DNA from: Selaginella moellendorffii
Taxonomy: Eukaryota; Plantae; Lycopodiophyta
Length of the DNA: 64,000 bases
Assembly (NCBI RefSeq): GCF_000143415.4
Contig: NW_003314272.1
Coordinates: 2,443,728-2,507,727 of the forward strand
Reading direction: 5' to 3'
Part shown: positions 4,601-46,556 of the stretch, piece by piece
How the letters are laid out: each line of letters opens with the position of its first letter
How positions within the stretch are numbered: the first letter of the stretch is position 1
Translations under genes and position numbers: made by a program
Notes under the pieces: generated by a model
Seen by the model: only the letters and a program-made list of their open reading frames with translations
Told to the model about the DNA's origin: nothing
Databases searched by the model: none

Positions 4601-5509
4601 TACGGAAGAAATACCAAAGATGATGAGCACGAACCTGCCAAACTAGATGGGGACGCAAGTACTCGGCGTCTGGACTGTTCTTCGGCTTCTCAATAAAAGT
4701 AAGGCGCTGCTGTGAGGCTGTATCGAACAGTTTGACACCCTCGTCATTCGCCCACGCGATAAGGCTCGTTCTCCATTTGACAGCATGGATGGGACCCTCT
4801 CCCGAGTGCAACACCTGCAAAAGAACAAAAGAAAAGGTGTAGAAAAACCGAAGTGATCGTGACAAAGCTTTGAAGAATGAAAGAAAAATGGAGAGAGCAG
4901 AGTAATCTTCACAAGTGTCGCTACCTGATCTTTGGGACCAAACCAGCCTTTGCTGTTGAGAATGAGATGCCCTGCCAGTCCCCCGCCAGCAAAACGATTT
5001 GTTTTGCAGTAGTCTGGATCCAGCGCGACGGCCTTCATTGGCCGGTGGTAGTGGAACTTCTCGTGACTGTCGGTATACAGGCTGCTCACCACCACGGATC
5101 CATCGTCACTGCAGCTCCCCACGAACTCTCCAGCGCTATCGAAGCTCAGCTCGTTCACAGTGGCAGTATGAGCAGCGAATTCCTTCACCTGGATATCCCA
5201 TTCCATTCCATTTCCATCCAAAAAAACTGATAGGAGACTCACCTGGTTTCCCTGGTAATCCAGCAAATGCACCCTGCCGCCGTGCGTTCCCAGCGCGATC
5301 ATCCGCTCGGCGACGCTGATGCACGAGGCCGTGTCGCTGGAGAGAAGAGAGGGAACACTACCTCCCAGGCGCTTGTACTTGAGGCGCGGCTCTTCATCCT
5401 CGTCATCGATCGCCTCCTGCGCCGAGGAGGAATCGTCAGCGGCGTCGTCATCGTCGTCGCATTCGTCGTCGGCATCGGCGCGCGCGAGCTCCTCCTCCTC
5501 GTCCTCCAT
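1685..5509 (-). CDS. VPS41: Vacuolar protein sorting 41 (HOPS subunit), multi-exon
   Basis: Acidic N-terminus followed by EPRLKYKRLGGSV...IALGTHGG (WD40 region), HYHRPMKAVALDPDY, clathrin-repeat helices (ELYAEFEPRLLLPFLRSSQYY), and a C-terminal RING (CCIC...CGHFYHVTC...CILC). GT-AG introns of ~50-70 nt. Stop at 1685-1687. Confidence 0.95.
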
Positions 5510-12113: not shown

Positions 12114-12345
12114 TCCACTTATCATTGAGACTAACAAAGCGTCCCATTCTTTTATAATCCACGATCGGCACGAGACGAACGAGGAGAAACGCTAGCGCCC
12201 TTTTGTTTTCTTTCGCTGGCCATTCTCTTGGACAGTCCAATTCTTACCGTGCTTTAAGTTTTGGAGCTATTCGTTACATTGTGGTCTCGATCGCGTGGCA
12301 AATGGCTCGATTCTAGAGGGCTAAAGTTTTCTCCATTTGCCCAGA

Positions 12346-14034
12346 ATGGGCATTTGCGTCCACTGCTCACTACTCACGGCGCTTCCAGGTCCCGTGGATC
12401 GCGACAACTCGATCGCCCGCCAGGAGCACACCTCGGATGATCCGCAAGAACTGGAGCTCCCATCGCCTAGTTTCGATAACTACGCCTCCCTCCTCCGCCA
12501 CTGCTCCCTCTCCTACGGCAAGCGCGTCCACGCGTATATTGTCTCCTCGGGGCAGGACAAGAATGTCGTGCTCAACAATCTCGTCGTCCAGATGTACGGC
12601 CGCTGCGGCAGCGTGCGCGACGCCAAGACAGCCTTTGACTCCCTCCCCGTACGGAACGTCTTCTCGTGGACCATCCTCATCGCGGCATATGCCCAGAATG
12701 GGCATCTTTCCGAGGCGCTCGTTCTCTTCCGGCAAATGGACTGCGATGGGATGGGGCCCAACGAGATAACTTTGATCACCATCTTGGGAGTTCTTGCGTC
12801 GACGAGAAGCGTCCGCGAGGCCCGCTCGCTCCACGCGCGCATCCTCCACACGCGTTTCCACTCCCATTGCCAAGTCCTCACGGCCGTGATCCACGTCTAC
12901 GGTCGCTGCCGCTGCCCACAAGACGCGCGGCACGCCTTTGACGCCATGCCCCCCCGCAAGCGGAATGTGGTGGCCTGGAACACCATGGTGGCTGCGTATG
13001 CCCAGAACGGGCATACCGCTCAGGCGTTCGAGGTGTACCGCGTGATGAGCAGCGGGGATTCGCCGGTGCGTCCCAACTCCGTCACCTTCCTTAACATCCT
13101 GTCGGCGTGTGTCGCCCCCGCGGACCTCTCCTTGGGGCGATCCGTGCACGCCGGCATCCGCGGCTGGGAGACCGACGTCATGGTCGGCACCGCACTAGTG
13201 AGCATGTACGGCAGGTGCGGATGCGTTGACGCCGCCACCGCCGCCTTCCGTGCGATGCTCGTCCGCAACCTCGTCTCGTGGAACGCCGTCATCGCCGCAA
13301 ATGCCCAGAACGGGCACGGCGCGTCGGCGGTGCTGCTGTTCCGGGAGATGAGCCTCGAGGGTGTAAAGCCCAACAGCGTGACGCTCGCGAGCGCGCTAGA
13401 GGGCTGTGCGTTTGCGGGGGCGCTGCAGCAGGGGAGGACAATCCACACACTCATGGTAGGCGGCGCCGCCCCGTTGACCTCCGAGTCTGGGGTCGTGCTG
13501 TGGACCTCGCTCCTCAACATGTACGCGAAATGCGGCACAGTCAACGACGCCGAGGGCATTTTCCACAGCATGGCGTGTAGAAATATCATCACTTGGAATA
13601 CTCTTCTCGCGGCATATGCCCAGCGTGGGCATGTGTGCGAGGTGGTGGACACCTTTGCCCTCATGCAACAGGAGGGTATCGGCGCAAACCCTATCACCTT
13701 TGTCAATGTTCTCTACGCCTTCAGCCATGCGGGGCTGCTGGAGCCGGCGGTGAAGTGCTTTGGATCGATGCTTCCAGAGTATGGGATCCAACCGGACGTG
13801 GAGCACTTCGGATGCCTGGTCGATCTCATGGGCCGTGCGGGCTGGCTCAACGAGGCCGAGGACGTGATCAAGCTCATGCCTCTCAAGGACGACGCCGTGT
13901 GGCTCGCGCTTCTCAATGGCTGCAAGATGCACCACGATTCCCAGCGCGGGGCTCAAGCAGCGGGCAAGGTCTTCAACATGGAGCTCAAGGATTCGGCGCC
14001 GTACGTGCTGCTCTCCAGCATTCACTCAAGGTGA
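12346..14034 (+). CDS. PLS-class pentatricopeptide repeat protein ending in a truncated E domain (candidate organellar RNA-editing factor)
   Basis: Intronless ORF with repeated MYGRCG...A...F..M..RNVVSWN..IAAYAQNGH motifs, then HFGCLVDLMGRAGWL..AE and W.ALLNGCKMH. Ends at SAPYVLLSSIHSR with no DYW domain. Confidence 0.93.
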   Translation: MGICVHCSLLTALPGPVDRDNSIARQEHTSDDPQELELPSPSFDNYASLLRHCSLSYGKRVHAYIVSSGQDKNVVLNNLVVQMYGRCGSVRDAKTAFDSLPVRNVFSWTILIAAYAQNGHLSEALVLFRQMDCDGMGPNEITLITILGVLASTRSVREARSLHARILHTRFHSHCQVLTAVIHVYGRCRCPQDARHAFDAMPPRKRNVVAWNTMVAAYAQNGHTAQAFEVYRVMSSGDSPVRPNSVTFLNILSACVAPADLSLGRSVHAGIRGWETDVMVGTALVSMYGRCGCVDAATAAFRAMLVRNLVSWNAVIAANAQNGHGASAVLLFREMSLEGVKPNSVTLASALEGCAFAGALQQGRTIHTLMVGGAAPLTSESGVVLWTSLLNMYAKCGTVNDAEGIFHSMACRNIITWNTLLAAYAQRGHVCEVVDTFALMQQEGIGANPITFVNVLYAFSHAGLLEPAVKCFGSMLPEYGIQPDVEHFGCLVDLMGRAGWLNEAEDVIKLMPLKDDAVWLALLNGCKMHHDSQRGAQAAGKVFNMELKDSAPYVLLSSIHSR

Positions 14035-25089: not shown

Positions 25090-28000
25090 TCAAGCTCTGT
25101 TGTGTTTGAGAAACTTGAAAGATGTGACCGCCAGCGCCGCGAAGAAGAGCGCCATCCCACACAGCGCCAGATAGTCCCAGTGGTTGCGGCTCATCTCGAT
25201 CGGTCTGGTAGCCAGCAGTCTATCCCACACGAACGCAGGCCGGGTGGTGTTGGTCCGGGTCAGGAGCTGCTCGACGTCGTGAAGCCTCTTGCAGTGGCAG
25301 CCGGGGCACGGCTGGCGGATGACGCAGCTTAAGCAGGCCGTGGTCCCAGTGTCGCAGTAGAAGGAGGTCGGGGTGAGGATGTTGATCGTGTACTGGAACG
25401 GGTTGATCCAGTAGAGCCACTTGTAGAAGCGGATCCTGTTCCTGGGAACCGAGACGCCGGACGAGGAGATCCACATGGACATGATGATGGAGGAGAAGGT
25501 GACGGCTATGGTCGGGATCGGAGCTGCGCAGGCCAGGAAGACGCCGTAGCACACCACCACCATGGTGAAGAGGAAGAGGCACGTCCAGTACTTGAGGAAC
25601 ATCGTGAAGGTATCGACTCCGACGCCGGCCATCCCGTTTGCTATCCCGACGAAGACGAACGTTCCCAGGAGGATGTATGGGATCTCCGAGACGAGCCAGG
25701 ACAGCGGGTAGAGCAGCGAGGTGTACATGCGAGCCCGGCTCTCGCGGACGTAGACCTGCCTGTCGGTGCCGAGCTGCGGGATGAGATTGTTGGCGGTGGT
25801 GGCGCAGATGAGGATGGCCTCGATGTACATGATGAGCGACGCCGACTGCATGGAGGTGGACCGCTCGACGTCGATGTTGAGGAAGAGTGTGCCGATGACG
25901 AGCGCGATGATGACAATGCCCGTGAGCCGGTTGAAAGTGTAGCGGACGTTGCGCCACAGGAACCTGGCGTTGCGGAGGAACACCATAGCGAACTGCGTCT
26001 TGTAGGGGGCGATGTAGCGGGAGTTGAGATGGTGGAGGCCGTCGTCTTTCTGGTCACGCAGGGACTGGAGCTCGGCCGCGTTTGCGAGCTGCAGTGGGCT
26101 GTTATGATATGCGGAGACGAAGTCCGCCGCGGGCTCCCGCTTCGTGGTTCCGCCACCCAGGATGTCCAGCAGGAACACCATCGGGCTCCGCCGCGGGTCG
26201 TAAGGTGGCACGCCTGGAATGGCCGTGAAATAGTCGAGGAGCTGGCTGCCGTTGGTACCGGGTGGTCCGAAGTAGACTTGCTTCCCCTCCCGCAAGACCA
26301 GCACGCTGTGGAAGAGGCCCAGTGTCTCGGCGCTGGGATGGTGCAAGGTGACGAGCAGCGTGCGTCCGTTCATGGCCACCGTTTGCAAGAGGTGCAGAAC
26401 GTTTCTCGCGCTGGCTCCGTCCAGCTGCGAAGTTGGATCGTCGAGAAACAGGATGCTGGGATTTGCTGCCAGCTCGATGGCTATGGTGAGCTTCTTGGTG
26501 ATCTCCCGCGGCCGCTTGTTTATCTGCTGGAAGACCCCGACCAGCTTGTTGCTTACGTGGGAGAGGCCCGTGAGCTCGAGTATGAGATCGACGTGACGAG
26601 CCTTGTCGGCGGAGCTTATGTGCCGCCTGAGCCGGAGGTTGGCGCTGAACTCGAGAGACTCTCGGACTGTGAGATACGGCTGGTGCATCTCGACGTTCTC
26701 GGCAAAGCCAGAGATGCGGTGGAAGCACGTCTTCTTCAGCCGGACACCGTTGACGAGTACCTCGCCTTCCGAGGGCATCCTGCCGGCCAGGCACTTGAGG
26801 AGTGTCGACTTTCCTGCGCGAGTGCTTCCGACGAGAGCTAGCATCTGGCCTGGCTTGACATAGCCGGAGATCAGGCTCAGGTGCCCTGTTGGAAGAGTGA
26901 TGTCGAAGAACGTGAGAACTAGAGGCCTCACAGGAAGATGGAGTTCCATCCACTTGGCTGCTTCTTCTTGACCGGGACCGTCGCGGAGGCTACCGTCCTC
27001 TACTCTGCTCAGCTCCTCCGGATCTGGTTTTACAGCTTCTTCGTCGGCAACTGGATGAAGCTGGCCTTTCCTGACAGGAGATGGCGCCAGCTCCGGCAAG
27101 CGGGACTTTTTGTACGCCAGGTATGCGAGGAAGTTGAGAGCGAGGATGAAGATGACGATTGCCGCGTACGCGAGCACCAGCCTTCCCCCGGAGGCTTCCA
27201 AGTCATAGAACTTGATAAAGGCCCGGCCGAGCGTGAGCCTTGGGTTTACCAAACAGAACTGGAAGTTGAGATGGCTCGTGCATGGCTGGTCGTACCGGGT
27301 CTTCATCTGAGTCGAGGAGTAGATGATGTTGCCCCAGCGCGTTGGAACGATGTAGAGCATCCATTTCCAGTAAGCGGGTGTCACACTGGGTAGCAAAATC
27401 ACGCCAGAGAAGAGAAGACACACGAGGATGAAAAGTCCTGTGAATGAAAGAAAATAAACCCAATGTTTTGTCAAAAGGTGTTTCAAACCTGCCAAAGCTG
27501 CGGCATTCTCCAGCAGCGGAGCAAATCCGCCGACGAGAAACACGAACGACGATCCCATGTATCCTATCACAAAGATCAGCGCCAAATACTGGAAGTAGTG
27601 CGCAGCATTTTCCAGTGAGAGGCCCGCGAGGAAGTACGTACACATGCTATAGATTATTGCCTGCTCAAGAGAATGACCATGTATGTGTGAAGCTTCCGAC
27701 AATCAAGCGACTCTTACCTCGAGAAGTGATTGCGGGAGACTCACGAGGCCATGAGCCACGACGTATGAAGAAACTGGGAAGAAATGCAGCTCGCGGTGCT
27801 TTTGGAAAACCGGCCGATGAATCAAGAGGTGGATTGGGAGTTGTGTGAGGTTTATAAGCATCAAGACCATCATCGAGACGAAGCCAAGGGTTCGTAGCGC
27901 AATCATCTCATATTGATCGATCTTGCCGCCTTTCTTGTAGAAGAAAGAACCAGCAAAGAGTCCAAGAACAGTAATCTGTACGAAAACGATTGTTGAAAGC

Positions 28001-30126
28001 TAAGAAAAAGTCTAGAGCTTTTCGAACCTGGAACAGCCGAAGTATGATCAGGATTTTGAAACGAATCGCAAATGTAAATTGACGCTTCACAAGGCATTGC
28101 GTAGACCATAGCCAGTCCTTCACGTTGACAAATCCAAACCGCTTTTTGTAGCACGCACCGGTTTCTTTCTGGACAGGAAAACTCCATGAGATTACCATTA
28201 ACATCTGAAGATTTGGTATGAGTTCTCACCTCTTGCATTTTACGCTCCAGTTGCACGTGAAGTGATCCTTCTCTCGAGTTTAGCAAGTCGGCAACTTTAC
28301 AAGCTTGAGCCGCCTGTTCGGCTGGAGAGCCACCTCTAACGTAGTGAGTACTACCGTCAGGTAGCACAACAGCAGTGATTTCGTCTCCCACTCGAACCGC
28401 TCCATTGGTTATGATCTCTCCGGCCTCGGAGACATTTGTCACGTAAACACCTACAAAACCTTATAAGTCGACACTAAGAGGAACACATATCGTTACCCGG
28501 GCCATTCAGCGTGTCATGCTGGATGGAGATCTCAATATCGGAGATAGTCTCGGCCATGTAAGTGTGAGTCACGTCTTTGCTGGAAACGATACGCATGACG
28601 TCTTTGAAATGGTCGGATGCTTTATAAGATACAACAAGCTCCGGAATTCCCAGTTTTGTAAAACCAGGCATCAGGTATCTAGCTCCAGAACCCGCAGAAA
28701 TATCTTGAAGGAACACAGCAGGATCGACATAGCTAGGCTTTTTATATCTGGCAGGCAACAAGGAAGTTAGTTCGTCAGGAGATAAGAGAGTTTAGACATA
28801 CCCAAGCTTGAAGAAGTAGTTTTCCACACCGTGTCGAGGACCTTGGTAGATCATCTGGCCCTCGGACAAGATAATGATCCTGTCAAAAAGCTCGAAAACT
28901 TCCGGAGCTACCTGAGCCATGCAAGTTACTAGAGCGCATTCTTGAACACGAATCACTGTGTCTAAGAGATTATGAAGCCTGTCATAAAGGCGTAACGAGT
29001 CCTCTGCCGTTGCTGGCTGATCGTATAGAAAGACTGAAAAAGTCCGCATCGCGATCTCTGCTGTCGTAAGCCTGGCTTTCGCTGATTCCTTCAGGAGAGG
29101 CCCGACCACCAAATGCTCGATTTGCTTTAAGCCGAAAGTCTGTAGAACATATTCCAGGAATGGATTGTCGCTGTCTGCCAAGTCCGGAGCAAAGCACCTG
29201 ATCATTTGGGCCGTGAGTTCCTGCGGTCGTAGCCGTCGCGTGCATTTCTCGGCAAACTCGAGAGTTTCTCGAATGGTAAGCACCGGCAAGTGGCTGATAA
29301 AAGAACAGCATTAATTGGAGTTCAGACAAGAAGAAAACAAAACAAAGATTACGTACACGTTGTGAAGGCCTGTAGCATAAGCAATCGGACGCTTGGTCTC
29401 GAGATCTGGCGTCAATACGGAGTCGTTGTATAAGACCTGGCCTTCAAACTTTACGAGCTTGCTGGGATGAAAGTGTCCGGCAAGGACCTGGTATAATCAC
29501 AGAAAGATGGATAAGTCACATTGTAATAAGAAACCACTAAATTACCTTCAAGAGAGCAGTCTTTCCACTTCCTAGAACAAAGAAAAAAAGAAAAAAACCG
29601 TGAAAATGTAGCTAGAGTTCGTTAAGTTTTGGAGAATTACCTGCCGGACCGATCACTAGAGTCATGGAGCCAGGCATAACGTAGCCACTCACGTCGTCAA
29701 GTACCTTGACACTGCTCGGTTGATCTCTTTTCTTCGCGAGAAGCTTTAGAGGACCGAGAAAGCAGCCCACAATCTTCCTTCCAAACGTTTCATAGCTCTG
29801 CGCTTGCTGCTGGGGACTGTTCACGGTCACAGTGACACCCTTGAATCTTATCACCTGCAAACGCACGCCTGGTAAAGATCTTCCCGGACAGAAAGAAAAG
29901 AACAAGGAAAATTTTAAATATCTGGTACCAGGTCATATGGATCCGTCGCAGCGTGGTACTGCTCCAGATCGCTCTTGAGCGAGCTCGATCTCGCAATGCT
30001 GAGGCTCACAGCCCTTGGCAGCTCCTCATTGACGACGAGCTCGCGGAGGGACGAGGAATTGGAGATTCTTGCGGCCTCCATTTCGTGGCCGCGATCATCA
30101 GCGCCATCATCCGCGGTGGCAGCCAT
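25090..30126 (-). CDS. Full-size ABCG/PDR-like protein A (NBD1-PDZ-TMD1-NBD2-TMD2) with degenerate ATPase motifs
   Basis: VLDDVSGYVMPGSMTLVIGPAG/SGKTALLK, LTIRETLEFA, FELFDRIIILSEGQMIYQGPR, TMD1, GYVKPGQMLALVGSTRAGKSTLL, LTIAIELAANPSILFLDDPTSQLD, TMD2. The listed 870-aa ORF reads through one short intron near 27440-27490. Confidence 0.88.
28230..28575 (-). other. PDZ-like domain within ABCG-A
   Basis: Spliced translation THTYMAETISDIEISIQHDTLNGP/GVYVTNVSEAGEIITNGAVRVGDEITAVVLPDG...CKVADLLNSREGSLHVQLERK follows the PDZ pattern G-phi-phi-V..V...G.A...G.phi.VGD.I.AV...V...L.....phi.L..ER. Confidence 0.72.
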
Positions 30127-30633
30127 CCCCGATCGACGATCGGGAGCTGTATTCTCACAGAAATTCTCCAAATTTCCTAGATCAAGGAGAAAGAAGCGCG
30201 GAGATCACTGGAAGAAGCTCTACCTGGCCCAGATTTCCAGCTCCCATGACTGCGTTGAAATTCGTAAAAGCCCTATCTCTCTGGCAGGAGAGAGACATCC
30301 TAGTCAACTCAAACACCTCCATATATAGCTCCCATATCTCTAGAAATATTATAGTATTTCTTCCCAGATGTTAGTCCACGACGCTCGCAAATATCCAAGC
30401 AAGCCGCCACCATCGATCTTAATTTTTTCTTCCGAAGTTTCGCACGAAAGCTGAGTGAAAAAAGAAAAGAAAAAAATTGTCGTATTGAAGTACGTAAGCC
30501 TTGAGCTCAATCGTGAAAGGTCCACCATCTAGGAAGGAAATTTAGAAAACTACCAAGGAAATTGCAAAATACCTCACTATAGTCCTCCAAAGTTCTCGTC
30601 ATAGCCCAGAGCGTCGCGAGAACGTCGTGAGTT

Positions 30634-33600
30634 TTACTTCCTGTTGTGCTTGAGTCGCGCGAAGGATACGATCGCCAGGACCGCGAAGAGCAGCACCATG
30701 AAAGCCAGAGCCAGGAAGTCCTTCCCAATCCTGTGCTTCTCAAGAACTCTTGCCTTGCTCAGCCTCTCCCACACGAAGCTTGCTCGAATGAACTGGCTGA
30801 AGACCGGCCCATAGATTTGCACCAGCTTCTTCTCCAAGTCGACCAGCCTCTTGCACTTGCATCCAGGACAACTCGCGCCGATCGTGCAAGCATTGCACGC
30901 CGGAGTTCCGGTGTCGCAGTGGAACGCAGTCGTGGTGAGGATATTGACGGCGTACTGATACGGGTTGATCCAGTAGAGCCACTTGTAAAACTGGATGTTG
31001 TAGCGCGGAATGGAGACCCCCGAGGACGCCACCCACACCGAAGTCGATATCGACGAGACCGTCATGGCCAGCAGCGAGTTTGGAAACAGCAGCGTGACGA
31101 AGATGCCGAAGTAAGTCACGGCCAGGGTGAAGAGAAACAGGCCGATCCAGTACTGGACGAACGCGGACACGGAGTCGACGGCAAGGTTGGCCAGGCCGTT
31201 TCCAATCCCGACGAAGGCGAGTGTGCCGAGCAGCAAGTATGGAACCTCGGCGATGGCCCAGGACAGCGGATACAGCATCGGGGAGTACATCCTTGCTCGG
31301 TTCTCTCGATAGTAGACGAGCCTGTCCGTTCCGAGCTGCGGTATAACGTTGTTGGCCGTGAGCCCGGAGATCATAATCAGCTGGATATACGGGAAGAGGC
31401 TGGCGGACGTCATGGACAGCAGCTTTTCCACGGAGATGTTGAGGTAGAGTGTTCCCATGACGAGAGCGACGAGAATGGTCCCAAGGAGGCGGCGGAGTGT
31501 GTATGTCACGTTCCTCCATAAGAAACGCTGGTTCCGGAGGAACACCATCGCTGCCTGCGTCTTGAACGAAGCTGCGTATCGAGAGCTGATGTTCTTGAGC
31601 TCGGGATCTGGCTGCTGCTTGAGAAGCCTCTCGAGTACCTCCGCGTTTGCCTGATGCAGAGAACTGGACTGGTACAGCTGAGAGAAGTCGTGCAATGGCT
31701 TTCGCTCCTTTATGCCTCCGCCAAGTGCTCCGAGGATGTAGGTGACAGGGTTCCACTGCTCGTTGTAAGGTGGTGAACTCGGCACTGACGTGAAGTAGTG
31801 CAGCACTTGCTTGCAGTTCCAGCCAACGGGGCCGAAATAGGCTGTGTGACCGCCAATAGCTAGTACCAACACATCGTTAAACACGCTGAGTGCCTCTCCA
31901 CTGGGATGATCCAGCATGCTGATGATAGTACGCCCGCTTAAAGCAACACTCTGGAGCAGTCTCAGAATCTCTCTGGAGCTAGTGCCATCCAGCTGCGCCG
32001 TGGGATCCTCCAAGAAAAGTATGCCGGGGTTGACGGCGAGTTCCACAGCTATAGTAAGTTTCCTTCTTGTCTCCTGGATTCGAGCAGTGACGAGCTTCAA
32101 GTTGCCAACAAGTTGATTGCTCATAGCTGACAATCCCAAAAGTTCCAGGACCTCCGTCACATGCCGAGCTTTGTCGTCCGCACTGATTTGTTTTCCCAGC
32201 CTGAGATTTGCACTGAACTCCAGGGACTCTCTGACAGTAAGATACTGTTGGTGAGCTTCCAACTTCTCAGCAAATCCAGATATCCGGCAGATGGCGAGTC
32301 TGTCCAGTTTCAAACCGTTTAAAGAAACGTCACCCTCGAGCTTGCCGGGTGGTAGCCTGCCTGCAATGCAGTTGAGCAACGTTGCCTTGCCCGACCGTGT
32401 GCCCCCAGCAATTGCTAGCATTGTCCCTGGCTTGGCATAGCCAGAGACGTTGTCCAATACTACTTGCTCAAAAGAAGATCGCACGCCCCGCCTGGTGAAC
32501 CTCAGCTGGTGAAAGGAGAGCGTTACAGGCTTGACAGATAACTTGCAAGTCCACCTCCCAGGTGCTCGTGTACCTCCGTTCTCTGCTTGTTCCACATTGT
32601 TGGGGCCGCGAACATACTGTTTCTGCCTTGGTATAGCCGATGCCGTTTCCTGTATCCGGACTTTGCTGTACGCAAGATATGCCAAATAAATGAGAACCAG
32701 AATATATGCAACGATGACTCCGAATGCGAGAACAAGCCTTTTTCCACCAGCTTCTAGCTCATAATACTTGAGAAATGCTTGGCCAAGAGAAAGTGTTGGA
32801 TGAAGAAGACAGAATGGATACGTGCGGTAAAGTGTGCAAGGTAATTCATAGCGGTTATCGGTTTGAGTCGATGTAAAAATGACATTTCCCCAACGAGTTG
32901 GTGTAATGTATAGAACCCATCGCCAGTACCAGCTGATTACACTTGGAATAATAGTGGAGCCCGAAAATAGAAGGTTCAAAGCGACAAATGAACCTGTAAA
33001 AACAGTTGCTGAAGCTACATTATCTCAGGAAAAGACATACCTCCCATCGTTGTGGCTACTTCCAGCATTGGTGCAATGGCACCTACCAACAACATCCAAA
33101 GTGAGCCCAAATAAGCAGTGACAAAAATCAATCCTAAGTACTGAACATAATGTGCTGCCTTCTCTTTAGACAGCGAAGCTAAAAAATACACGCACAAACT
33201 GTAAAGCAGTGCCTGTAATACTTTCAACGCTCAAGTCATACGAGAAAATAATAGCATACCTCTATAACTGATTGAGGAATGTTCAAAATGGCATGTGCTA
33301 CTACATACGAAGAAACAGGAAATAAGTGTTGACCTTGCTGCTTGTAGAAAACGGGTCGATGAAACACTATATGGACCGGAAGCTGGACGATGTTGATTAA
33401 CATTAAAGTCATCATAGATATAAATCCAATCGTTCTCATAGAATTCATTTCGTATTGATCAAGTCTGCCTCCTTTGTGATAGAACAAGGAACCAGTGAAC
33501 AAGCCGACTAAAAGAATCTGAAGAGTCAGCATTTAGCATGACTAAATCGGACGCTGTCATTACCTGGAGAAGTCGTACAATAGCTAATCCCTTAAGTCGC

Positions 33601-35654
33601 ATTACAAATATTGTTTGACGCCGGATCAAACACCAGGTCGACAACCACCACGAACAAAATTGTTGCCATCCGAAGTGTCTTTGATAATACATAGCATTGC
33701 CTGCCTGCAAACTAAAGACATAAAGGCACTTTCAAATTACGAGATGCCCAACCTCATCGAGATTTCGCTCCAACTGTAAAAGGATGGAGCTATACGATGC
33801 CTTTAACATGTAGGAGACTTTCGAAGCTGAATCCGAGCTCTCAACATACTGAAATTCTTCATTACGCTCGCAAACTCCTGTCACCTTGTCGCCAACACGA
33901 ACGCAAGCACAACTTTCTACACTCGGAGCTTCCGTCACCAACACATCTGCAACGGATCACTGCATTTTAGTAGCAAAAGAACACATATTCTTTTCCATAC
34001 CATTCCCTTGCAGCGAAGCACGAATGCTAGAAGTTCTGAATAAGGTTGCTTGAGTCGCCTTTTCACTTGAAACAAGCCGAAAAACGTCTTTATAGTAGTC
34101 CGATCCTTTATAGAACTTTATAAGCTCCTCAATACTAAGCGATGAAGGCTGCTGTGAATACTGTCCACCCTCGCCAGCTGCAATATCCTGTAAAAATGTT
34201 CCAGATTCTACATGAGCGGGCTTCTTGAACCTGCCAGGCAAAAATAAAACGAAGAACAAAGTGTGCCAAACACATACCCAAGCTTTAAGAAGTAGCTCTC
34301 GACGCATTCACGCGGGCCTTGATAGAGAACCTCACCCTCGCTGAGAAGGATAACACGGTCGAAAAGATCGAACGATTCCGGTGAAATCTGAACCAGCGAT
34401 ATGACGGCGGCACAATGCTGTACGTGAACCACGCTTTGCAGCATTTGAAGCAAGTCATACGTGATAAGCGAGTCCTGTCCAGAACTAGTCTGATCATACA
34501 GCAACACAGAATATGTACCCATAGCAATCTCCGCAGTTGCCAGTCTGTTTCGGTCGCTATCCTTGATGCTATCAGCAAGAGTCCCAACCCGTTCGTTTTC
34601 AATCTTTTTGAGACCAAACATGTGTAGGATGTAGTCCACGTACGAGTCCCGGCCCTGTACAGCATTGGACTGTGGCATACAACGCTGCCATAGAGCACAC
34701 CGTTGAACAAACTCGATAGTTTCTCGGACTGTGAAAAACGGCAAATGCCTGCAAGTGTGCCAGTTTATACGCTGAGAAACATCAACGAGCGTACTTACAC
34801 GTTGTCGTGTTGAGTCACATAAGCGATCGGCCGCTTTATAGCAAGTCTGGGCGACAAAGGGTCGTTGTTGTAAAGCACAACGCCCTCCAGCCTGAGTCGT
34901 CTGTTGGGACGTAGCTTTCCTCCCATCACCTGTTATCACCACTGTCTGTAGAATTAACAGCCAATGTAGCATATGAAACAAAGCATTTCATATCTCCAAA
35001 CAATCACCATGCTACCTTGAGGAGAGTGCTCTTCCCACTGCCTGTTTAGAAGGAAAAGGTCTCAAAAGAAACAAAGAGCAAGGTCACGAACCTGGCGGAC
35101 CGAGAACAAGAGTCATGGAACCCGGCATCACATAGCCGCTCACGTCCTTGAGAACCTTGATCTTGCTGGATTTCTTCTTGGAACGAGCCAGCTTAATGCA
35201 AACTCCTAGAAGGCAACCAAGTAGCTTCTTGCCAAAGGTATCATAGCCCGGACCAACTTCGGTGTGATCCATCGTAACACTGATGGCTTTGAAGCGAAGA
35301 ACCTGAATGGAACGTAAGATCCCTCCACGGTAGAAAAAGGGAACTTACTAGAGTCCAGGGAGGGGATTTCTCCTTGGAAGTGGATGGAGATTCATGGCTG
35401 ACATCACCAAAGGAGCGCCTTGTGGCACACATTGGACAAAATCCCGGGCCAGCATTTTCCTCCGGGCTCCTCGCCCGTGGCGCCGACTCATCGACCGGCG
35501 ATGGAGGCGATTCTTCCTGTTCCTGAGAGCTAGAAGAGCTGCTCATCGGGTGCGGCATGGCGATCGGCGCGTAGAGATCCTCGACCAGCGACGCCGACAG
35601 CCGGAGCGAGAAGGGCCTCACCACCGAGGACTTGCGCGATGATCCATGCTCCAT
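30634..35654 (-). CDS. Full-size ABCG/PDR-like protein B, tandem paralog with the same architecture
   Basis: VLKDVSGYVMPGSMTLVLGPPG/SGKSTLLK, FDLFDRVILLSEGEVLYQGPR, TMD1, VLDNVSGYAKPGTMLAIAGGTRSGKATLL, LTIAVELAVNPGILFLEDPTAQLD, TMD2. Intron positions I checked are shared with paralog A. Confidence 0.88.
33753..34060 (-). other. More divergent PDZ-like domain within ABCG-B
   Basis: KATQATLFRTSSIRASLQGN/DVLVTEAPSVESCACVRVGDKVTGV...SKVSYMLKASYSSILLQLERN. Same position and same intron phases as in paralog A. Confidence 0.6.
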
Positions 35655-41729: not shown

Positions 41730-44700
41730 GCACCCCCTCCTCAAGAACGAGTGGAACGAGGACGTGAATGAGAACGAAGAGGAGGATGAGATGGGTGGCG
41801 AGGGACGGGAGATGGAGAAAAAGAATGAGGACTGGGACGAGAAGGATAGCGGCGATGGAAGTCTTGAACAAGGTCAGGAGAATGAATCAGGTTGTCCGCA
41901 AGTTCCCAAGTGCGTTCTTCAGGTCCATAACCCTTCCAGTCGACCAGATAGTAGAGTTTAGACCGTGAGATCTTGGAATCAAGGATGTCCTGAACCTCAT
42001 ACTCAGACCCATCCTCGAGCTGCACTGGTGGAGGCTGAGGAATGACCCGATTTGGAATAGGACTGGGAATATAAGGCTCAAGGAGAGAAGAGTGAAAAAT
42101 GGGGTGAATTTGATAGGAGGAAGGAAGTGCAAGGCGATAAGTAACAGGATTAATGATAGCAGTGATAGGGAAAGGACCGAGGCGTTTGAAATCGAGTTTG
42201 GGACATGGCTTGGTGGTGGAGCTATTTCGCCTGAGGAGCCAGACTTTATCCCCAATATTGTAAGGGGGACAATCCTGACGATGGGCATTGGCAAATGTTT
42301 TGTGAGATTCTTGAGCACGATGAAGGTGGAAGGAGATGGAGTTGTGGATTTCCTGGAGGTTGGAGACAAATGTCTCAGAGCGGGGATTTGAATGAGAGGA
42401 TTCGGATGGAGAAGAAAGTGAGAGATTGAATCGCGGATTTCGGCCAGAGTTCGCAAAGAAGGGGGAAACTCGAAGAGAGGAGTGAATAGAGTTGTTATAG
42501 GAGAACTCAGCAAGGAGAAGGATATCGAACCAGTCATCCTGATGATAGTTGATGAAGCACCTCAGGAATTGTTCTAACGTCTGAATCATTCGCTCGGACT
42601 GTCCATTAGTTTGAGGATGATATGCCGAAGAAAGGTTGGCCTTCACTCCAAGAAGCTGCAAAAACTGTTGCCAAAAATGAGAGATGAACTGAGGTCCCCG
42701 ATCCAAAACAACATCTGCAGGAATCCCATGAAGTTGGAAAATTTCCCTGAATACCAGTTTTGCCATGTCCTCGCCCGAAAACTCCTTGGTACATGGCAGG
42801 AAGTGCGCCATCTTTGTGAAGCGATCCACCACGACTAAAATGCTGTTGATGCCTCCAGAATTCGGAAGATCACTCAAGAAATCCATGGAGATGGATTCCC
42901 GAGGACCTAAAGGGACCGGGAGGGAACGAAGCAATCCTGAAGGAAGGTGGCGAGGTACCTTATTTTGGGCGCAAGTGTCACAGGAGGTAACAAAAGTTTT
43001 GATGTAGTCGTCCATGTAAGGCCACCAAAAGTCCCGTGCAACCAGCTCATAGGTCTTTGCGATGCCGAAGTGACCAACAGTCGGGCTATCGTGGCACGCC
43101 ATCAGGACCAACCTTTGAGCATCACCTTCAGGAACGTAAAGCTGCTCCCCACGGTACAACAAGCCATCTAAGAACTCAAACTCGTCAAATCACTGGTAGT
43201 CGGGAGTCACTAGGTGTCCAGCCTGAAGATGGGGGAAAATGTTGCTGGCGAGGTTATCGGATTGAAGATCGTTTCTGATCGCATCCATCAAGGAGGAGTC
43301 CTGAGGGGCCAGGGAAATTGCCATAACTTGAAGCCGATCAAGACTAAGGATAACTTGATGCTATTGATCGAAGGCAAGATTACCAGGCCTGAGACTAAGA
43401 TAGGAGCACCTTGAAAGAGCATCAGGAAGGCCTTGAAGCTTTCTAGGTCTGTACTTGATAATAAAGTCAAACCGACTCAGGAATTGTGCCCACCTTGCTT
43501 GACGACGGCTCAAAACTCGGGAAGTGGCAAAGTACTCGAGATTTTTGTGATCTGTCCAGACTATTGTTTGATGGCCCGCCCCCTTCAAGAAATGGCACCA
43601 CTCTCCAAAGGAATCCACGATGGCAAGGAGCTCCTTGTCGTGGATTTCGTAATTGATCTCTACAGGCTGGAATTTCCGAGAATGGAAAGCGATCGGATGA
43701 AGTTCGTGATCCGTTCCGAGTTGAGACAGCACAGCACCGATGGCGAAGTCGAAGGCGTCAGCCTTGATGAAGAAAGGTTGTGAGGGATCAGTGTGGATCA
43801 AGACGGGAGCAGAACTGAAGGCCGCCTTAAGTGTGTCAAAGGCCTGCTGGGCAACAGTAGACCAAGAGAAGGGAACATCCTTGCGAGTGAGATGCGTGAG
43901 AGGAAGGACAATGTCAGAGTAGTGAGCAATGAATTTGCGGTAGAAGTTGGTGAAGCCAAGGAAAACCTGAATGTCTAACATTGATTGTGGAGGCTCCCAT
44001 TCGAGAATAGTCTTGACTTTGGCAAGATCCATCGTGATACCCTCAGGAGTGACAATGTACCCAAGGAACTCCACAGACTGCTGATCGAAGGAACATTTCT
44101 CAAGTTTCGCATATAGGCTGTGTTCTCGCAGCTTCGCCAGCACCTTGCATACATGTTCGTCGTGCTCCTCTTGATTTTTTGAGTAGATGAGGATGTCATT
44201 GAGGTAGACGATCACCATCTGATCAAGAAACTCCCGAAAGACATCGTTCGCCATGTGTTGGAAAACTACTGGAGCATTTGTCAAGCCAAATGGCATGACA
44301 GTGTACTCGAAGTGGCCATAGCGGGTTCGAAACGCAGTCTTCCATTCATCACCAGGCTGGATCCGGATCAGGTTGTATGTTCCACGGAAGTCGATCTTGG
44401 TGAAGAAGTGGGCACCGCCGAGGCATTCCAACAGGTCCGAGATCAGGGGCAGCGGATAACAGTTCCGAACAGTCACCTTGTTCAAACCTCGATAGTCGAT
44501 GACTAGCCACAAACTCCCATCCTTCTTCTTGACAAAGAAGATAGGCACTCTAGCTAGGGACTGCAAATGCTGAATGTACCCGGAGGCAAGGTTCTCATCC
44601 ACGTACTCTTTGAGGGCCCTAAGCTCGAACAGGGATAACCCGTAGATAGGTCCCCACGGAGGTGACGCTCCTTCCTGTAAATTAATGGAACAATCATAAG

Positions 44701-46556
44701 GCTGATGAATAGGCAGTACACTAGCTTTTTTCTTGTCAAACACATCCCCAAAATCATGATACTTCTCAGGAAGACTGACAAGAGAAACATGCAAAGCAAA
44801 AAGGAAAATAGGTTCTTCATGAAGGAGTTCTTTCATAGTGATTGTGGAGATAGGAGGAGGCATACGACTAAATGGAATGATGAGACGAGGATACTGTCCA
44901 GTGTAAGATGGAGGAGAGGAAAAAGAAGAGGGTGAAAACTTTGAGTCAAGAACAGAACCTCGATTTGAGTTTAGGGAACTTTTCCTGATTCAGACTCAAT
45001 GAACAGCAGAGGAAGCCGTGGGAGATGGTGATGTGGGAGAGATGAGCTGTAATTCCTTCCAACAGATCTGAGGCTGATGTAGTTGGAACCAAGGAAGACC
45101 GAGCACCACAGAGGAGGACTTGCTGTTGATGATGTTGAAAGCGATATTGGTGACGGTGCACCCGATGTGTACTCGAACGGGCAATGTTTCCCTAAGTCCA
45201 GAAGATGGAGACACAAAATGCCCGCCGATGCCTTCAACTCTCATATCCCATATGGTACAAGAAAGAGGAACGTGATGTCGGGCAGCAAAGTCCGTGTCCA
45301 TGAAGCAGGAAGTTGCACTCGAGTCTAGTAGTGCCAGAGCCTTGAGTCCTAATTGTCCGGTGAAAGAAAGGAGACATGGGATGCAGAAGTTGTGGGAATT
45401 GGTGGTGGCTTTGATGAAAGGTGGTGAGGAGCTTGATAAAGAAGAAAAGTGATTTTTATTCGGGGAGTCCAAACAGACAGCTCCTACTCTGTTTGGACAG
45501 GGTTGTTTCCCGACTGCAACAAAGGTGGATTTTGAGGCAGAGTGGACTCGAGCAGTCGGGGAGGCTTCTTGGGACACATAGTTGCTTTGTGATTAGGATC
45601 AGCACAGTAGAGGCAAAGATTATGAGATATTCGACGTTGCTTCTCAGCAAGACTCAACTTCCCTTTGATGAGTCGGGGAGTACCAGAAATATCCATCGAG
45701 ACCAGAGCAATAGGTTCAAGAGTATGCCCCGAAGACTCAAGCTGGGATTCCTGAGTCTGGGACGGAAAAACAGCGGCACGGCGACTTTCCTGACGACACT
45801 CAAAGAGACAATTGTCACATCGAACAGCTTTGTTGATGGCATCTGATAGGTCCTTGGGATCCTCCATGGTGAGCAACAAATCCTTGACACCGTTGTTGAG
45901 GCCGAAACGAAATTGGTCAATCAGGGCCCGCTCATCCCACTGAGTGTCCAAGGCAAGGAGTTGGAACTCTGCAGCGTAGATCGAGGTAGGACAAGACCCC
46001 TAAGAGAGACGTCTCATCTTTGTGGTAACAGCCCGAACCCGATCCGTCTCGCCAAAACATGCTTCGAGCTTCTCTTTGAACAATTGAAGATCCATCAGCT
46101 TCGGAACCACAACCCCTTTCATGCTCTTCTCTAGAAGAGGAGAAAACCATGACAAAGCTGCACCTTCGAGCAACGTCCCAATCGCGCCAATTTGAGACTC
46201 GGAAGTGGGGTACCGCTGATGTTGAAGTGCAAAGATCAGCTCCATCTGGTTTAGGAATCCGCAAAGCTCCTAACGCTTGCCTGAAAATTTCGCCGGGAAA
46301 CTCACCTTCAGTTCAGGAACTTTGCTGGATCCTTGAGCTGAAAGTGAAGCAAGCTCCTGCTGCATGCGAAGAAGGATCACCTTCAGCTCGGTATTCTTAG
46401 ACTGGATTTTTGCAAGGACTTCGGCAAAGAAATCAGGATGGCTTGGAGACTCCATCAGCAAAAAGAAAGAAAAAGGGGGAAAAAAGCCAAAGGCAGTCAA
46501 ACAATCAAAACAAGCTAAAGGAAGAAAAATGAAAAAAAACACAATCTGAATCAAAC

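What the first reader, a model, noticed from the sequence alone, without database searches (positions are those of the whole stretch)
26330..34830. Both NBDs of both ABCG paralogs look catalytically dead: candidate ABC pseudo-ATPase sensor or channel regulator
Seen: NBD1 Walker B is FLYDQ (A, ~29017-29031) and LLYDQ (B, ~34490-34505) instead of MDE. NBD2 Walker B is FLDDPT (A) and FLEDPT (B) instead of FMDEPT. The NBD1 signature ISGGQ is replaced by LKESA (A) and IKDSD (B). The NBD2 signature LSTEQ is replaced by KRPREI (A) and RIQET (B). The Q-loop Gln is missing in three of four NBDs (YATGL, GFAEN, GFAEK). The NBD2 Walker A has G-to-R in both (GSTRAGKS, GGTRSGKA), and B has D at the H-switch position (MLDHP). 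The Walker A lysine is kept in all four NBDs. Established: Walker-B E-to-Q is the standard mutation that permits ATP binding but blocks hydrolysis, and asymmetric ABCs (Pdr5, CFTR, SUR) keep one working site. Inference: the same losses in two well-diverged genes with long open frames argue against simple pseudogenisation. They fit a nucleotide-binding, non-pumping role such as receptor, facilitator or SUR-like regulator, which would suit the PDZ insert.
Basis: partly seen in the sequence, partly recalled or inferred. Interest (0 to 1): 0.88.

Follow-up and report, generated by a model that had tools for sequence, protein, structure and literature searches.

The report
Plant ABCG proteins with dead ATPase sites
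Two neighbouring, intact and transcribed Selaginella genes belong to an old, little-studied plant family of ABC "transporters" in which both ATP-splitting sites have lost their catalytic residues, so they probably bind ATP without pumping.

Summary
The window is Selaginella moellendorffii. It holds two tandem 11-exon full-size ABCG genes on the minus strand: A (25093-30126, 1483 aa) and B (30637-35654, 1499 aa), 52% identical. In NBD1 the Walker B is D-Q and the signature is lost. In NBD2 the Walker A Gly4 is Arg, the Walker B is D-D or E-D, and the signature is lost.

The changes are not private decay. A and B sit in a monophyletic clade running from liverworts to angiosperms. In that clade the NBD1 Walker A lysine and Walker B Y-D-Q are invariant (35/35), both signatures are replaced by conserved non-canonical sequences, and the NBD2 P-loop has decayed (Lys in 24/37, Gly4 in 2/37). 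A PDZ-like insert follows NBD1 throughout.

Spliced RNA contigs from four studies confirm expression, strong for A and weak for B. B intron 8 was seen only with frame-breaking acceptors. Selection is purifying (ratios about 0.16 to 0.43).

Most likely these are non-hydrolysing ABCG proteins that bind ATP at NBD1. What they do in the cell is untested. I found no paper describing the degeneracy. Cho et al. 2020 describe a 'V1-type' clade with the same taxon spread; their sequence list was not available, so identity with this clade is unconfirmed.

The parts
25093..30126 (-). Gene A coding region, 11 exons, 1483 aa, full-size ABCG (NBD1, PDZ-like insert, TMD1, NBD2, TMD2). Exons: 30126-29929, 29854-29641, 29571-29546, 29487-29357, 29293-28802, 28747-28497, 28450-28230, 28168-28028, 27975-27718, 27660-27489, 27437-25093. 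Stop TGA.
   Evidence: Exact spliced mapping of P0001. Introns 1-3 seen as GT..AG joints in spliced contigs of 4 studies at word depth 49-342. Intron 4 is confirmed by loose ends.
30637..35654 (-). Gene B coding region, 11 exons, 1499 aa, tandem paralog of A (52% identity, same intron positions). Exons: 35654-35349, 35302-35092, 35041-35016, 34929-34799, 34748-34278, 34230-34001, 33946-33753, 33704-33564, 33517-33260, 33212-33041, 32993-30637. Stop TAA.
   Evidence: Introns 1, 2, 4, 5, 6, 7 and 10 are confirmed by RNA contigs at depth 4-14, and intron 9 by an 11-letter loose end. Intron 3 was not observed. Intron 8 was seen only with alternative acceptors.
29017..29031 (-). A NBD1 Walker B FLYDQ: the aspartate is kept and the catalytic Glu is replaced by Gln.
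   Evidence: Y-D-Q is invariant in 35/35 clade members.
34490..34504 (-). B NBD1 Walker B LLYDQ.
29558..29650 (-). A NBD1 Walker A GPAGSGKT, split by intron 2; canonical P-loop.
   Evidence: The P-loop Lys is present in 35/35 clade members.
29071..29094 (-). A NBD1 signature position, LKESAKAR in place of ISGGQKKR. In B it is IKDSDRNR at 34544-34567.
   Evidence: The clade consensus is I-S-D-x-D-R-Q-K.
26806..26829 (-). A NBD2 Walker A GSTRAGKS (Gly4 to Arg). In B it is GGTRSGKA at 32383-32406.
   Evidence: In the clade Gly4 is kept in 2/37, Gly6 in 7/37 and Lys in 24/37.
26431..26517 (-). A NBD2 signature position (KRPREITKK) through Walker B (FLDDPT). The B equivalent is 31999-32085 (ARIQETRRK ... 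FLEDPT).
26332..26349 (-). A NBD2 H-loop TLHHPS (His kept). In B it is MLDHPS at 31900-31917 (His position is Asp).
28230..28641 (-). A PDZ-like insert between NBD1 and TMD1 (aa 390-511, exons 6-7). The B equivalent is 33753-34127.
   Evidence: Conserved across the clade and absent from the oomycete and Dictyostelium PDRs aligned. AF2 model has mean pLDDT 76. The Foldseek top 50 are all PDZ domains, best E 1.8e-3. Pfam PDZ scores 16.3 bits against a cut-off of 23.2.
33471..33563 (-). B intron 8 region. The annotated acceptor puts the exon start at 33517. RNA contigs instead used acceptors giving exon starts at 33507 and 33471.
   Evidence: joints. One search shows both variants shift the frame and stop at about aa 579-591.

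Best explanation
A and B are tandem duplicates of a member of an ancient streptophyte family of full-size ABCG proteins. The family carries a PDZ-like domain between NBD1 and TMD1 and has lost canonical ATP hydrolysis at both composite nucleotide sites.

Shown:
- Intact spliced genes, transcription and purifying selection.
- Family-wide fixation of NBD1 Walker A GPPGSGKS and Walker B Y-D-Q.
- Replacement of both signature motifs by conserved non-canonical sequences.
- Decay of the NBD2 P-loop.

Inferred from ABC enzymology (Walker B Glu to Gln, signature and H-loop mutants abolish hydrolysis; the degenerate sites of Pdr5 and CFTR bind ATP without turning it over):
- NBD1 still binds Mg-ATP as a stable structural or regulatory ligand.
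- NBD2 no longer binds nucleotide in most members.
- The protein does not work as a primary ATP-driven pump.

The most likely mode of action is an ATP-liganded but non-hydrolysing ABCG fold, acting as a passive or gated conduit, a binding protein or a scaffold. The PDZ-like module would recruit or sense a partner. That last step is speculation.
For: - Motifs and gene models.
- Family-wide pattern in 37 members from liverwort to grasses. NBD1 Lys is 35/35 and Y, D, Q are each 35/35. NBD2 Lys is 24/37. NBD1 is the most conserved domain (mean column entropy 0.94).
- Monophyly and separation from canonical plant PDRs: SH-aLRT 100.
- Nearest outgroups (Closterium, Riccia, Chlorokybus) have canonical motifs, so the loss is derived.
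- Expression and splicing.
- Selection: A versus B overall dN/dS about 0.16 with saturated dS, and dN similar in NBDs and TMDs. B polymorphism gives 12 synonymous to 10 nonsynonymous, pN/pS about 0.26. Parasponia versus Trema orthologs give 0.32 for NBD1 and 0.43 for NBD2.
- PDZ-like insert.
Against: - No biochemical data exist. Catalytic death is inferred from sequence only.
- Copy A NBD2 keeps the P-loop Lys, the Walker B Asp, an Asp at the catalytic position and the H-loop His, so slow hydrolysis there cannot be excluded.
- Liverwort, fern and conifer members keep D-E in the NBD2 Walker B.
- The family has been lost from many angiosperm lineages, and ortholog dN/dS of 0.3-0.4 shows only moderate constraint.
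- Copy B is weakly expressed, and one intron was seen only in non-productive forms.
Confidence: 0.6

Rival explanations
1. They are still ATP-driven exporters using a non-canonical or slow catalytic cycle. Hydrolysis could occur at the NBD2 site of copy A (Lys, Asp-Asp and His present), or other residues could supply the catalytic base.
For: - A NBD2 retains the Walker A Lys/Ser, the Walker B Asp, an acidic residue at the catalytic position and the H-loop His.
- Basal members keep D-E in NBD2.
- TMDs are as conserved as in working transporters.
Against: - The partner signature for that site (NBD1) is lost in every member.
- Gly4 and Gly6 of the NBD2 P-loop are lost in most members and the Lys in a third of them, so this site is not under family-wide constraint.
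- The strongly constrained site (NBD1) carries an invariant Gln at the catalytic position.
Confidence: 0.22
2. One or both copies are decaying or non-functional duplicates (pseudogenes in the making). Copy B is the likelier candidate.
For: - B word depth is 4-14 against 49-342 for A.
- B intron 8 was seen only with acceptors that shift the frame and give a stop at about aa 579-591.
- B has an intron in its 3' UTR.
- B has Asp at the H-loop position.
Against: - Both have 11-exon frames of about 1500 codons with no stop or frameshift.
- B pN/pS is about 0.26.
- A versus B dN/dS is well below 1 in every domain.
- The motif changes are ancestral to the family, not private.
- Contigs cannot show isoform proportions.
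Confidence: 0.1
3. The apparent degeneracy is an artefact of misalignment or wrong exon models.
For: The N-terminal exons of B were built by hand. Short exons (26 nt) are easy to misplace.
Against: - HMMER alignment to Cdr1 and MAFFT alignments with canonical PDRs place the motifs at the same columns.
- RNA contigs confirm the junctions flanking the NBD1 motifs in both genes.
- The NBD2 motifs lie in one long exon.
Confidence: 0.02

Closest known systems
Fungal PDR transporters Pdr5 / Cdr1 (closest solved structures: 9iuk, 9s2c, 7p03)
   Same: Full-size ABCG with NBD-TMD-NBD-TMD order; these were the best PDB matches (E 1e-75 to 1e-79). Their NBD1 site is naturally degenerate, with the Walker B Glu replaced and the NBD2 signature non-canonical, and it binds ATP without hydrolysing it.
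   Different: Pdr5 and Cdr1 keep a fully canonical second site (NBD2 GxSGAGKT, LDEP, IHQPS plus NBD1 VSGGE), which drives transport. Here that site is degenerate too. They have no PDZ-like insert. In the fungal proteins the NBD1 P-loop Lys is Cys, whereas here it is kept.
Canonical plant PDRs (ABCG29-43 type, 'V3-type')
   Same: Same subfamily architecture. The NBD1 H-loop is of the same type, with Gln rather than His at the conserved position (compare xLLQP in canonical PDRs).
   Different: They form a separate clade in the tree. All catalytic motifs are canonical in Camellia PDR3, Adiantum and Arabidopsis PDRs. They lack the insert. The best Arabidopsis hit to a clade member scores 194 bits, against 350 or more for members.
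'V1-type' early-diverged full-size ABCGs of Cho et al. 2020 (PMC8359288)
   Same: Same taxon pattern: charophytes, bryophytes, Selaginella, Amborella. Same position outside the main plant PDR radiation. Probably the same lineage in the broad sense.
   Different: That paper reports only phylogeny; it does not contain the words Walker or degenerate. It states the type is absent from angiosperms other than Amborella, whereas members occur in magnoliids, monocots and many eudicots. Its sequence list was not available to confirm identity.
CFTR and SUR1/2 (ABCC channel and channel regulator)
   Same: ABC folds used for gating or regulation rather than pumping. One ATP site is non-hydrolytic and holds ATP stably.
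   Different: They are type IV (ABCC) folds, not ABCG. Both retain one hydrolytic consensus site that times the cycle. No homology beyond the NBD.
Engineered Walker B Glu-to-Gln mutants (for example ABCG2 E211Q)
   Same: Identical substitution at the catalytic base. In the mutants it permits ATP binding and NBD closure but blocks hydrolysis.
   Different: Here the substitution is natural and invariant across land plants. It is combined with loss of the partner signature motif, so ATP-dependent NBD closure may not occur at all.

Membership tests
Full-size ABCG (PDR-type) architecture | Two ABC_tran NBDs, each followed by an ABC2_membrane TMD (reverse topology) in one polypeptide | tested here: met
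   Pfam hits on the exons, precomputed domains of P0001, the spliced models, and best PDB matches Cdr1 and Pdr5 over both halves.
Canonical plant PDR (ABCG29-43 type) | Catalytic motif set: NBD1 ISGGQ and FMDE; NBD2 GVSGAGKTT, LSTEQ, FMDEPT, IHQPS | tested here: not met
   side by side with Camellia PDR3, Adiantum and Arabidopsis PDRs. A and B differ at every motif except the NBD1 Walker A.
Canonical plant PDR (ABCG29-43 type) | Phylogenetic placement inside the plant PDR radiation | tested here: not met
   ML tree. The canonical PDRs group with Picocystis (SH-aLRT 99). A and B fall in a separate clade supported at 100.
Canonical plant PDR (ABCG29-43 type) | Pfam PDR_assoc (PF08370) or ABC_trans_N (PF14510) | tested here: inconclusive
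   Neither is among the precomputed domains of P0001. PF08370 is listed for some clade members (P0003, P0122, P0366). I did not rescan the full-length protein.
V1-type early-diverged full-size ABCG (Cho et al. 2020) | Occurs in charophytes, bryophytes, Selaginella and Amborella; branches outside the main plant PDR clade | tested here: met
   Relatives are present in Spirogloea, Mesotaenium, Closterium, Chlorokybus, Riccia, Calypogeia, Selaginella and Amborella.
V1-type early-diverged full-size ABCG (Cho et al. 2020) | Same sequences as in the authors' tree | not testable with these tools
   No supplementary files are held for the paper.
Asymmetric ABC proteins with one degenerate and one consensus site (Pdr5, CFTR, SUR, TAP) | One consensus site with Walker B Glu, H-loop His, an intact P-loop and the partner's LSGGQ-type signature | tested here: not met
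   Site 1 has Gln at the catalytic position and a lost NBD2 signature. Site 2 has a decayed P-loop and a lost NBD1 signature.
Asymmetric ABC proteins with one degenerate and one consensus site (Pdr5, CFTR, SUR, TAP) | A degenerate site that still binds ATP | not testable with these tools
   The sequence is compatible: the NBD1 P-loop Lys and Walker B Asp are each 35/35. Binding needs biochemistry.
PDZ domain | Pfam PF00595 at or above the gathering score | tested here: not met
   16.3 bits against a cut-off of 23.2, E 0.013.
PDZ domain | PDZ fold (beta sandwich with a helix beside the peptide groove) | tested here: inconclusive
   AF2 model has pLDDT 76 and pTM 0.70. The top 50 Foldseek PDB matches are all PDZ domains, but with E from 1.8e-3 and TM-score 0.45-0.6 on the target.
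Pseudogene | Frameshifts or stops in the spliced model, no transcripts, or dN/dS near 1 | tested here: not met
   No stops or frameshifts. Spliced transcripts in 4 studies. Ratios of 0.16-0.43. Caveat for B: only non-productive variants were seen at intron 8.

The most novel reading that the evidence does not exclude
This would be the first ABC-transporter-fold family, old (shared by liverworts and flowering plants, with insert-bearing relatives in zygnematophyte algae) and still under selection, in which neither ATP site hydrolyses. It would be a true pseudo-ATPase ABCG. ATP would be held permanently at NBD1 as a structural or sensing ligand. The NBD2 site would be vestigial. The conserved PDZ-like domain would couple the membrane domain to a partner protein, making it a receptor, gated conduit or scaffold rather than a pump.
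Probability: 0.45. Interest if true: 0.85.

Novelty: new variant of a known kind. Interest (0 to 1): 0.72.

Why it matters
ABC transporters are defined by ATP hydrolysis. The known exceptions (CFTR, SUR, Pdr5-type asymmetry) all keep one working site. A conserved family with both sites degenerate and an invariant natural Glu-to-Gln at the only constrained site would show what an ABCG fold can do with ATP binding alone. It would also be a natural counterpart of the E-to-Q mutants used to trap ABC structures.

For plant biology it marks an unstudied gene family. The family has members in conifers, magnoliids, grasses, cassava, rubber tree, tea, coffee, eucalyptus and grapevine. It has gone unstudied because Arabidopsis lacks it, and automatic annotation calls its members ordinary 'ABCG36/37/43-like' drug pumps. 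Inventories that count these genes as transporters are probably miscounting.

Tried and rejected
- dN/dS between A and B per domain: synonymous sites are saturated (pS about 0.75), so only the overall ratio and the dN values are usable. I therefore added a polymorphism count for B and a close ortholog pair, Parasponia and Trema. The TMD1 value of that pair (0.72) is probably inflated by a faulty Trema gene model and was set aside.
- Pfam PDZ is below threshold and Foldseek has no match at E 1e-3 or better. I call the insert PDZ-like, not a PDZ family member.
- The 575-607 aa metagenome proteins at 43-44% identity first looked like possible microbial half-size relatives. Their motifs match those of the grass members (GGANGS..TLL), so I read them as fragments of plant genes.
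- Five literature searches found no description of doubly degenerate plant ABCGs or of PDZ-containing ABCGs. The supplement of Cho et al. is not held.
- The idea that the basic residue at Gly4 of the NBD2 P-loop pairs with the acidic NBD1 pseudo-signature was dropped. Grasses lose the basic residue but keep the acidic motif.
- Complex prediction and the second structure job were not used.


Full report
**What is there**

The best database match to the large ORF at 25090-27702(-) is a Selaginella moellendorffii protein, P0001, 'ATP-binding cassette transporter'. Exact spliced mapping shows that the window encodes P0001 residue for residue in 11 exons from 30126 to 25093 on the minus strand. This is gene A, 1483 aa.

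Immediately upstream on the same strand lies gene B, from 35654 to 30637. It also has 11 exons with the same intron positions, and encodes 1499 aa. Its C-terminal 1103 residues equal the truncated database model P0002. I built the N-terminal five exons from GT-AG sites and homology to A. RNA contigs then fixed the exon 2/3 borders at 35092 and 35041. A and B are 52% identical. Neither frame has a stop or a shift.

**The observation**

I checked the placement in two ways.
- The HMMER alignment to solved Cdr1 pairs GASGAGKTT with GSTRAGKST, LDEPTSGLDS with LDDPTSQLDG, and TIHQPS with TLHHPS.
- MAFFT alignments include canonical plant PDRs from Camellia, Adiantum and Arabidopsis. These show ISGGQ, FMDE, GVSGAGKTT, LSTEQ, FMDEPT and IHQPS in the same columns.

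So the NBD1 Walker B is D-Q in both genes. The NBD2 Walker B is D-D in A and E-D in B. Both signature motifs are unrecognisable. The Q-loop Gln is missing in three of four NBDs. The NBD2 Walker A has Arg at Gly4. B has Asp at the H-loop His. All four P-loop lysines are present.

**Not pseudogenes**

I laid contigs of four runs from four studies on 29350-35349. They skip the predicted introns exactly, with CT..AC ends on the plus strand (GT..AG on the gene strand), so they derive from spliced RNA.
- Gene A introns 1-3 appear in all four runs at word depth 49-342. Intron 4 is confirmed by loose ends that match exon 5.
- Gene B introns 1, 2, 4, 5, 6, 7 and 10 are confirmed at depth 4-14, and intron 9 by an 11-letter loose end.

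There is one caveat. B intron 8 was never seen with the annotated acceptor (exon start 33517). It appeared only with acceptors at 33507 (one run) and 33471 (another). Both shift the frame and end the protein near residue 580-590. Contigs cannot give isoform proportions, so this stays open.

Selection is purifying on all three measures.
- SNPs between the window and one run give 12 synonymous and 10 nonsynonymous changes in B, against site counts of 1073 and 3424. That is a pN/pS of about 0.26.
- Between A and B, synonymous sites are saturated. dN is 0.33-0.40 in NBDs and TMDs alike, and the overall dN/dS is about 0.16.
- For a close ortholog pair in angiosperms, Parasponia and Trema, dN/dS is 0.32 in NBD1, 0.43 in NBD2 and 0.34 in TMD2. 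I fetched the DNA for that pair and mapped it exon by exon; the Parasponia gene again has 11 exons.

**The family**

Searches with the C-terminal half, with the NBD1 region and with a grass member returned about 55 clusters of clear relatives. They come from:
- a liverwort (Calypogeia);
- lycophytes (a third Selaginella paralog, P0121, and Diphasiastrum);
- a fern (Adiantum);
- conifers (Taxus, Cryptomeria);
- Amborella and magnoliids;
- monocots (Dioscorea and many grasses);
- many eudicots (Vitis, Hevea, Manihot, Eucalyptus, Camellia, Coffea, Castanea and others).

Motif statistics over 37 members are striking.
- NBD1 Walker A is G-P-P-G-S-G-K-S, with Lys in 35/35.
- NBD1 Walker B Tyr, Asp and Gln are each 35/35.
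- The NBD1 signature position is a conserved I-S-D-x-D-R-Q-K.
- The NBD2 signature position is a conserved G-K-T-F-E-I-A-K-K.
- The NBD2 Walker A keeps Gly4 in 2/37, Gly6 in 7/37 and Lys in only 24/37. Grasses read GGANGS.ATLL.
- The NBD2 Walker B is E-E in most angiosperms, D-E in the liverwort, the fern and the conifers, and D-N, D-D or E-D elsewhere.

NBD1 is the most conserved domain of the protein. A segment of about 100-130 residues between NBD1 and TMD1 is conserved throughout and is absent from the oomycete and Dictyostelium PDRs that were aligned.

**Phylogeny**

An exhaustive profile-free search of 1.84 billion representatives, name look-ups and an ML tree of 41 full-length proteins (LG+G4, SH-aLRT only, quick search) give the following picture.
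- The 'YDQ' clade is monophyletic (support 100) and roughly follows the species tree. A and B are sister tandem duplicates (100).
- Its sister (100) is a second insert-bearing group: Riccia, a second Diphasiastrum gene, the zygnematophytes Spirogloea and Mesotaenium, and two unnamed transcripts. Motifs there are partly degenerate. Both signatures and the NBD2 H-loop are lost in all of them. Except in Mesotaenium, the NBD2 Walker A and B are still close to canonical.
- Next out are proteins from Closterium, Riccia and Chlorokybus with fully canonical motifs.
- Canonical plant PDRs form a different clade.

So the degeneracy is derived and stepwise. Its first steps are already present in zygnematophyte algae, and the Glu-to-Gln change is present in all sampled land-plant members.

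Cho et al. 2020 (PMC8359288) described a 'V1-type' of early-diverged full-size ABCGs in charophytes, bryophytes, Selaginella and Amborella, 'not detected in any other angiosperm'. This is very probably the same lineage. They did not discuss motifs, and the present data show it is widespread, though patchy, in angiosperms. No Brassicaceae, legume, Solanaceae, Oryza sativa, maize or wheat member appeared. The best Arabidopsis hit to a clade member is a canonical PDR at 194 bits, against 350 or more for members.

**The insert**

An AlphaFold model of A residues 390-539, built with a 30-sequence alignment, has mean pLDDT 76. Its 50 best Foldseek matches in the PDB are all PDZ domains, but the scores are weak (best E 1.8e-3). 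Pfam PDZ scores 16.3 bits against a cut-off of 23.2. I call it PDZ-like. This agrees with the earlier scan note s1-422959 on the same stretch.

**How it most likely works**

Established ABC enzymology says that the Walker B Glu is the catalytic base, that Glu-to-Gln mutants bind ATP but do not hydrolyse it, and that the partner signature and the H-loop His are needed for turnover.

- Site 1 is formed by the NBD1 P-loop and Walker B together with the NBD2 signature. It keeps what Mg-ATP binding mainly needs (the P-loop Lys and Ser/Thr and the Walker B Asp, invariant across the family; most members also keep a Gln at the Q-loop). It carries an invariant Gln at the catalytic position and faces a non-canonical partner motif. 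It resembles the degenerate site of Pdr5 or CFTR, which holds ATP stably.
- Site 2 is formed by the NBD2 P-loop together with the NBD1 signature. In ordinary PDRs this is the working site. Here the P-loop glycines and often the lysine are gone and the partner signature is lost, so it is probably empty in most members.

I therefore read the family as ATP-binding but non-hydrolysing (confidence about 0.6). What the membrane domain then does is not shown by anything here. It could be a passive conduit, a binding protein, a receptor or a scaffold.

The well conserved TMDs argue that the membrane part is functional. So does a conserved Cys-rich last extracellular loop. The repeated losses in angiosperms and ortholog dN/dS of 0.3-0.4 suggest a useful but dispensable role.

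**Rivals**

- A slow or unorthodox ATPase, about 0.22. Copy A keeps the Lys, Asp-Asp and His in NBD2, and basal members keep D-E.
- Decay of copy B, about 0.1.
- An alignment or gene-model artefact, about 0.02.

**Novelty**

The genes are annotated and the clade has probably been seen in trees. Five literature searches found no report of four things:
- the double degeneracy;
- the invariant natural Glu-to-Gln;
- the PDZ-like insert;
- the wide angiosperm distribution.

I class it as a new variant of a known kind.

Noticed in passing
window 33471-33563 (-): B intron 8 was seen only with alternative acceptors (exon starts 33507 and 33471, in two different studies). Both shift the frame and give a stop about 13-25 codons later. 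The annotated productive acceptor (33517) was not among the listed joints.
   Followed up: partly
window 30529-30572 (-): One run shows a 44-nt GT..AG intron in the 3' UTR of gene B, about 64 nt downstream of the stop codon. That position could make the mRNA a target of nonsense-mediated decay.
   Followed up: no
window 25282-25359 (A) and 30844-30921 (B), (-): The last extracellular loop is Cys-rich (C-x6-C-x2-C-x6-C-x2-C-x-C in A and B). The pattern is conserved in non-seed members and reduced to about four Cys in angiosperms. The oomycete and Dictyostelium PDRs aligned lack it.
   Followed up: partly
window 27438-27488 (-): Intron 10 of gene A is 51 nt, in frame and without a stop. The mechanical 870-aa ORF therefore reads through it, and retention would add 17 residues inside TMD1. 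This explains the 98% rather than 100% identity in the first search.
   Followed up: yes
window 25093-27437 vs 30637-32993 (-): Synonymous divergence between A and B is lower in TMD2 (pS 0.55) than elsewhere (about 0.75), and the long 3' exons are more GC-rich than the 5' halves of both genes. Possible causes are codon bias or old gene conversion.
   Followed up: no
P0022-P0036: Metagenome 'proteins' of 575-607 aa at 43-44% identity carry the motifs seen in the grass members (for example GGANGSVATLL). They are probably fragments of plant genes in environmental assemblies, not microbial half-transporters.
   Followed up: partly
P0121 (SELMODRAFT_406260, another Selaginella contig): A third Selaginella paralog of the clade (1600 aa) keeps a canonical-looking NBD2 Walker A (GSMGSGKS). 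It still has Y-D-Q, lost signatures, E-D in the NBD2 Walker B and Gln at the H-loop position.
   Followed up: partly
window 41741-44863 (-): Ty3/gypsy-type retrotransposon pol (reverse transcriptase, RNase H, integrase, chromodomain). It follows an AT-rich stretch at about 36-40 kb (GC 0.29-0.32).
   Followed up: partly
window 12337-14034 (+) and 4643-5509 (-): A PPR-repeat gene with an E motif, and an exon encoding a Vps41-type beta-propeller. These are ordinary neighbours.
   Followed up: partly
L002 (Trema orientale) vs L001 (Parasponia andersonii): The Trema gene model (P0135, 12 exons, 1364 aa) is only 84% identical to Parasponia in TMD1, against 95-97% elsewhere. The likely cause is a mis-annotated exon rather than fast evolution.
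   Followed up: no
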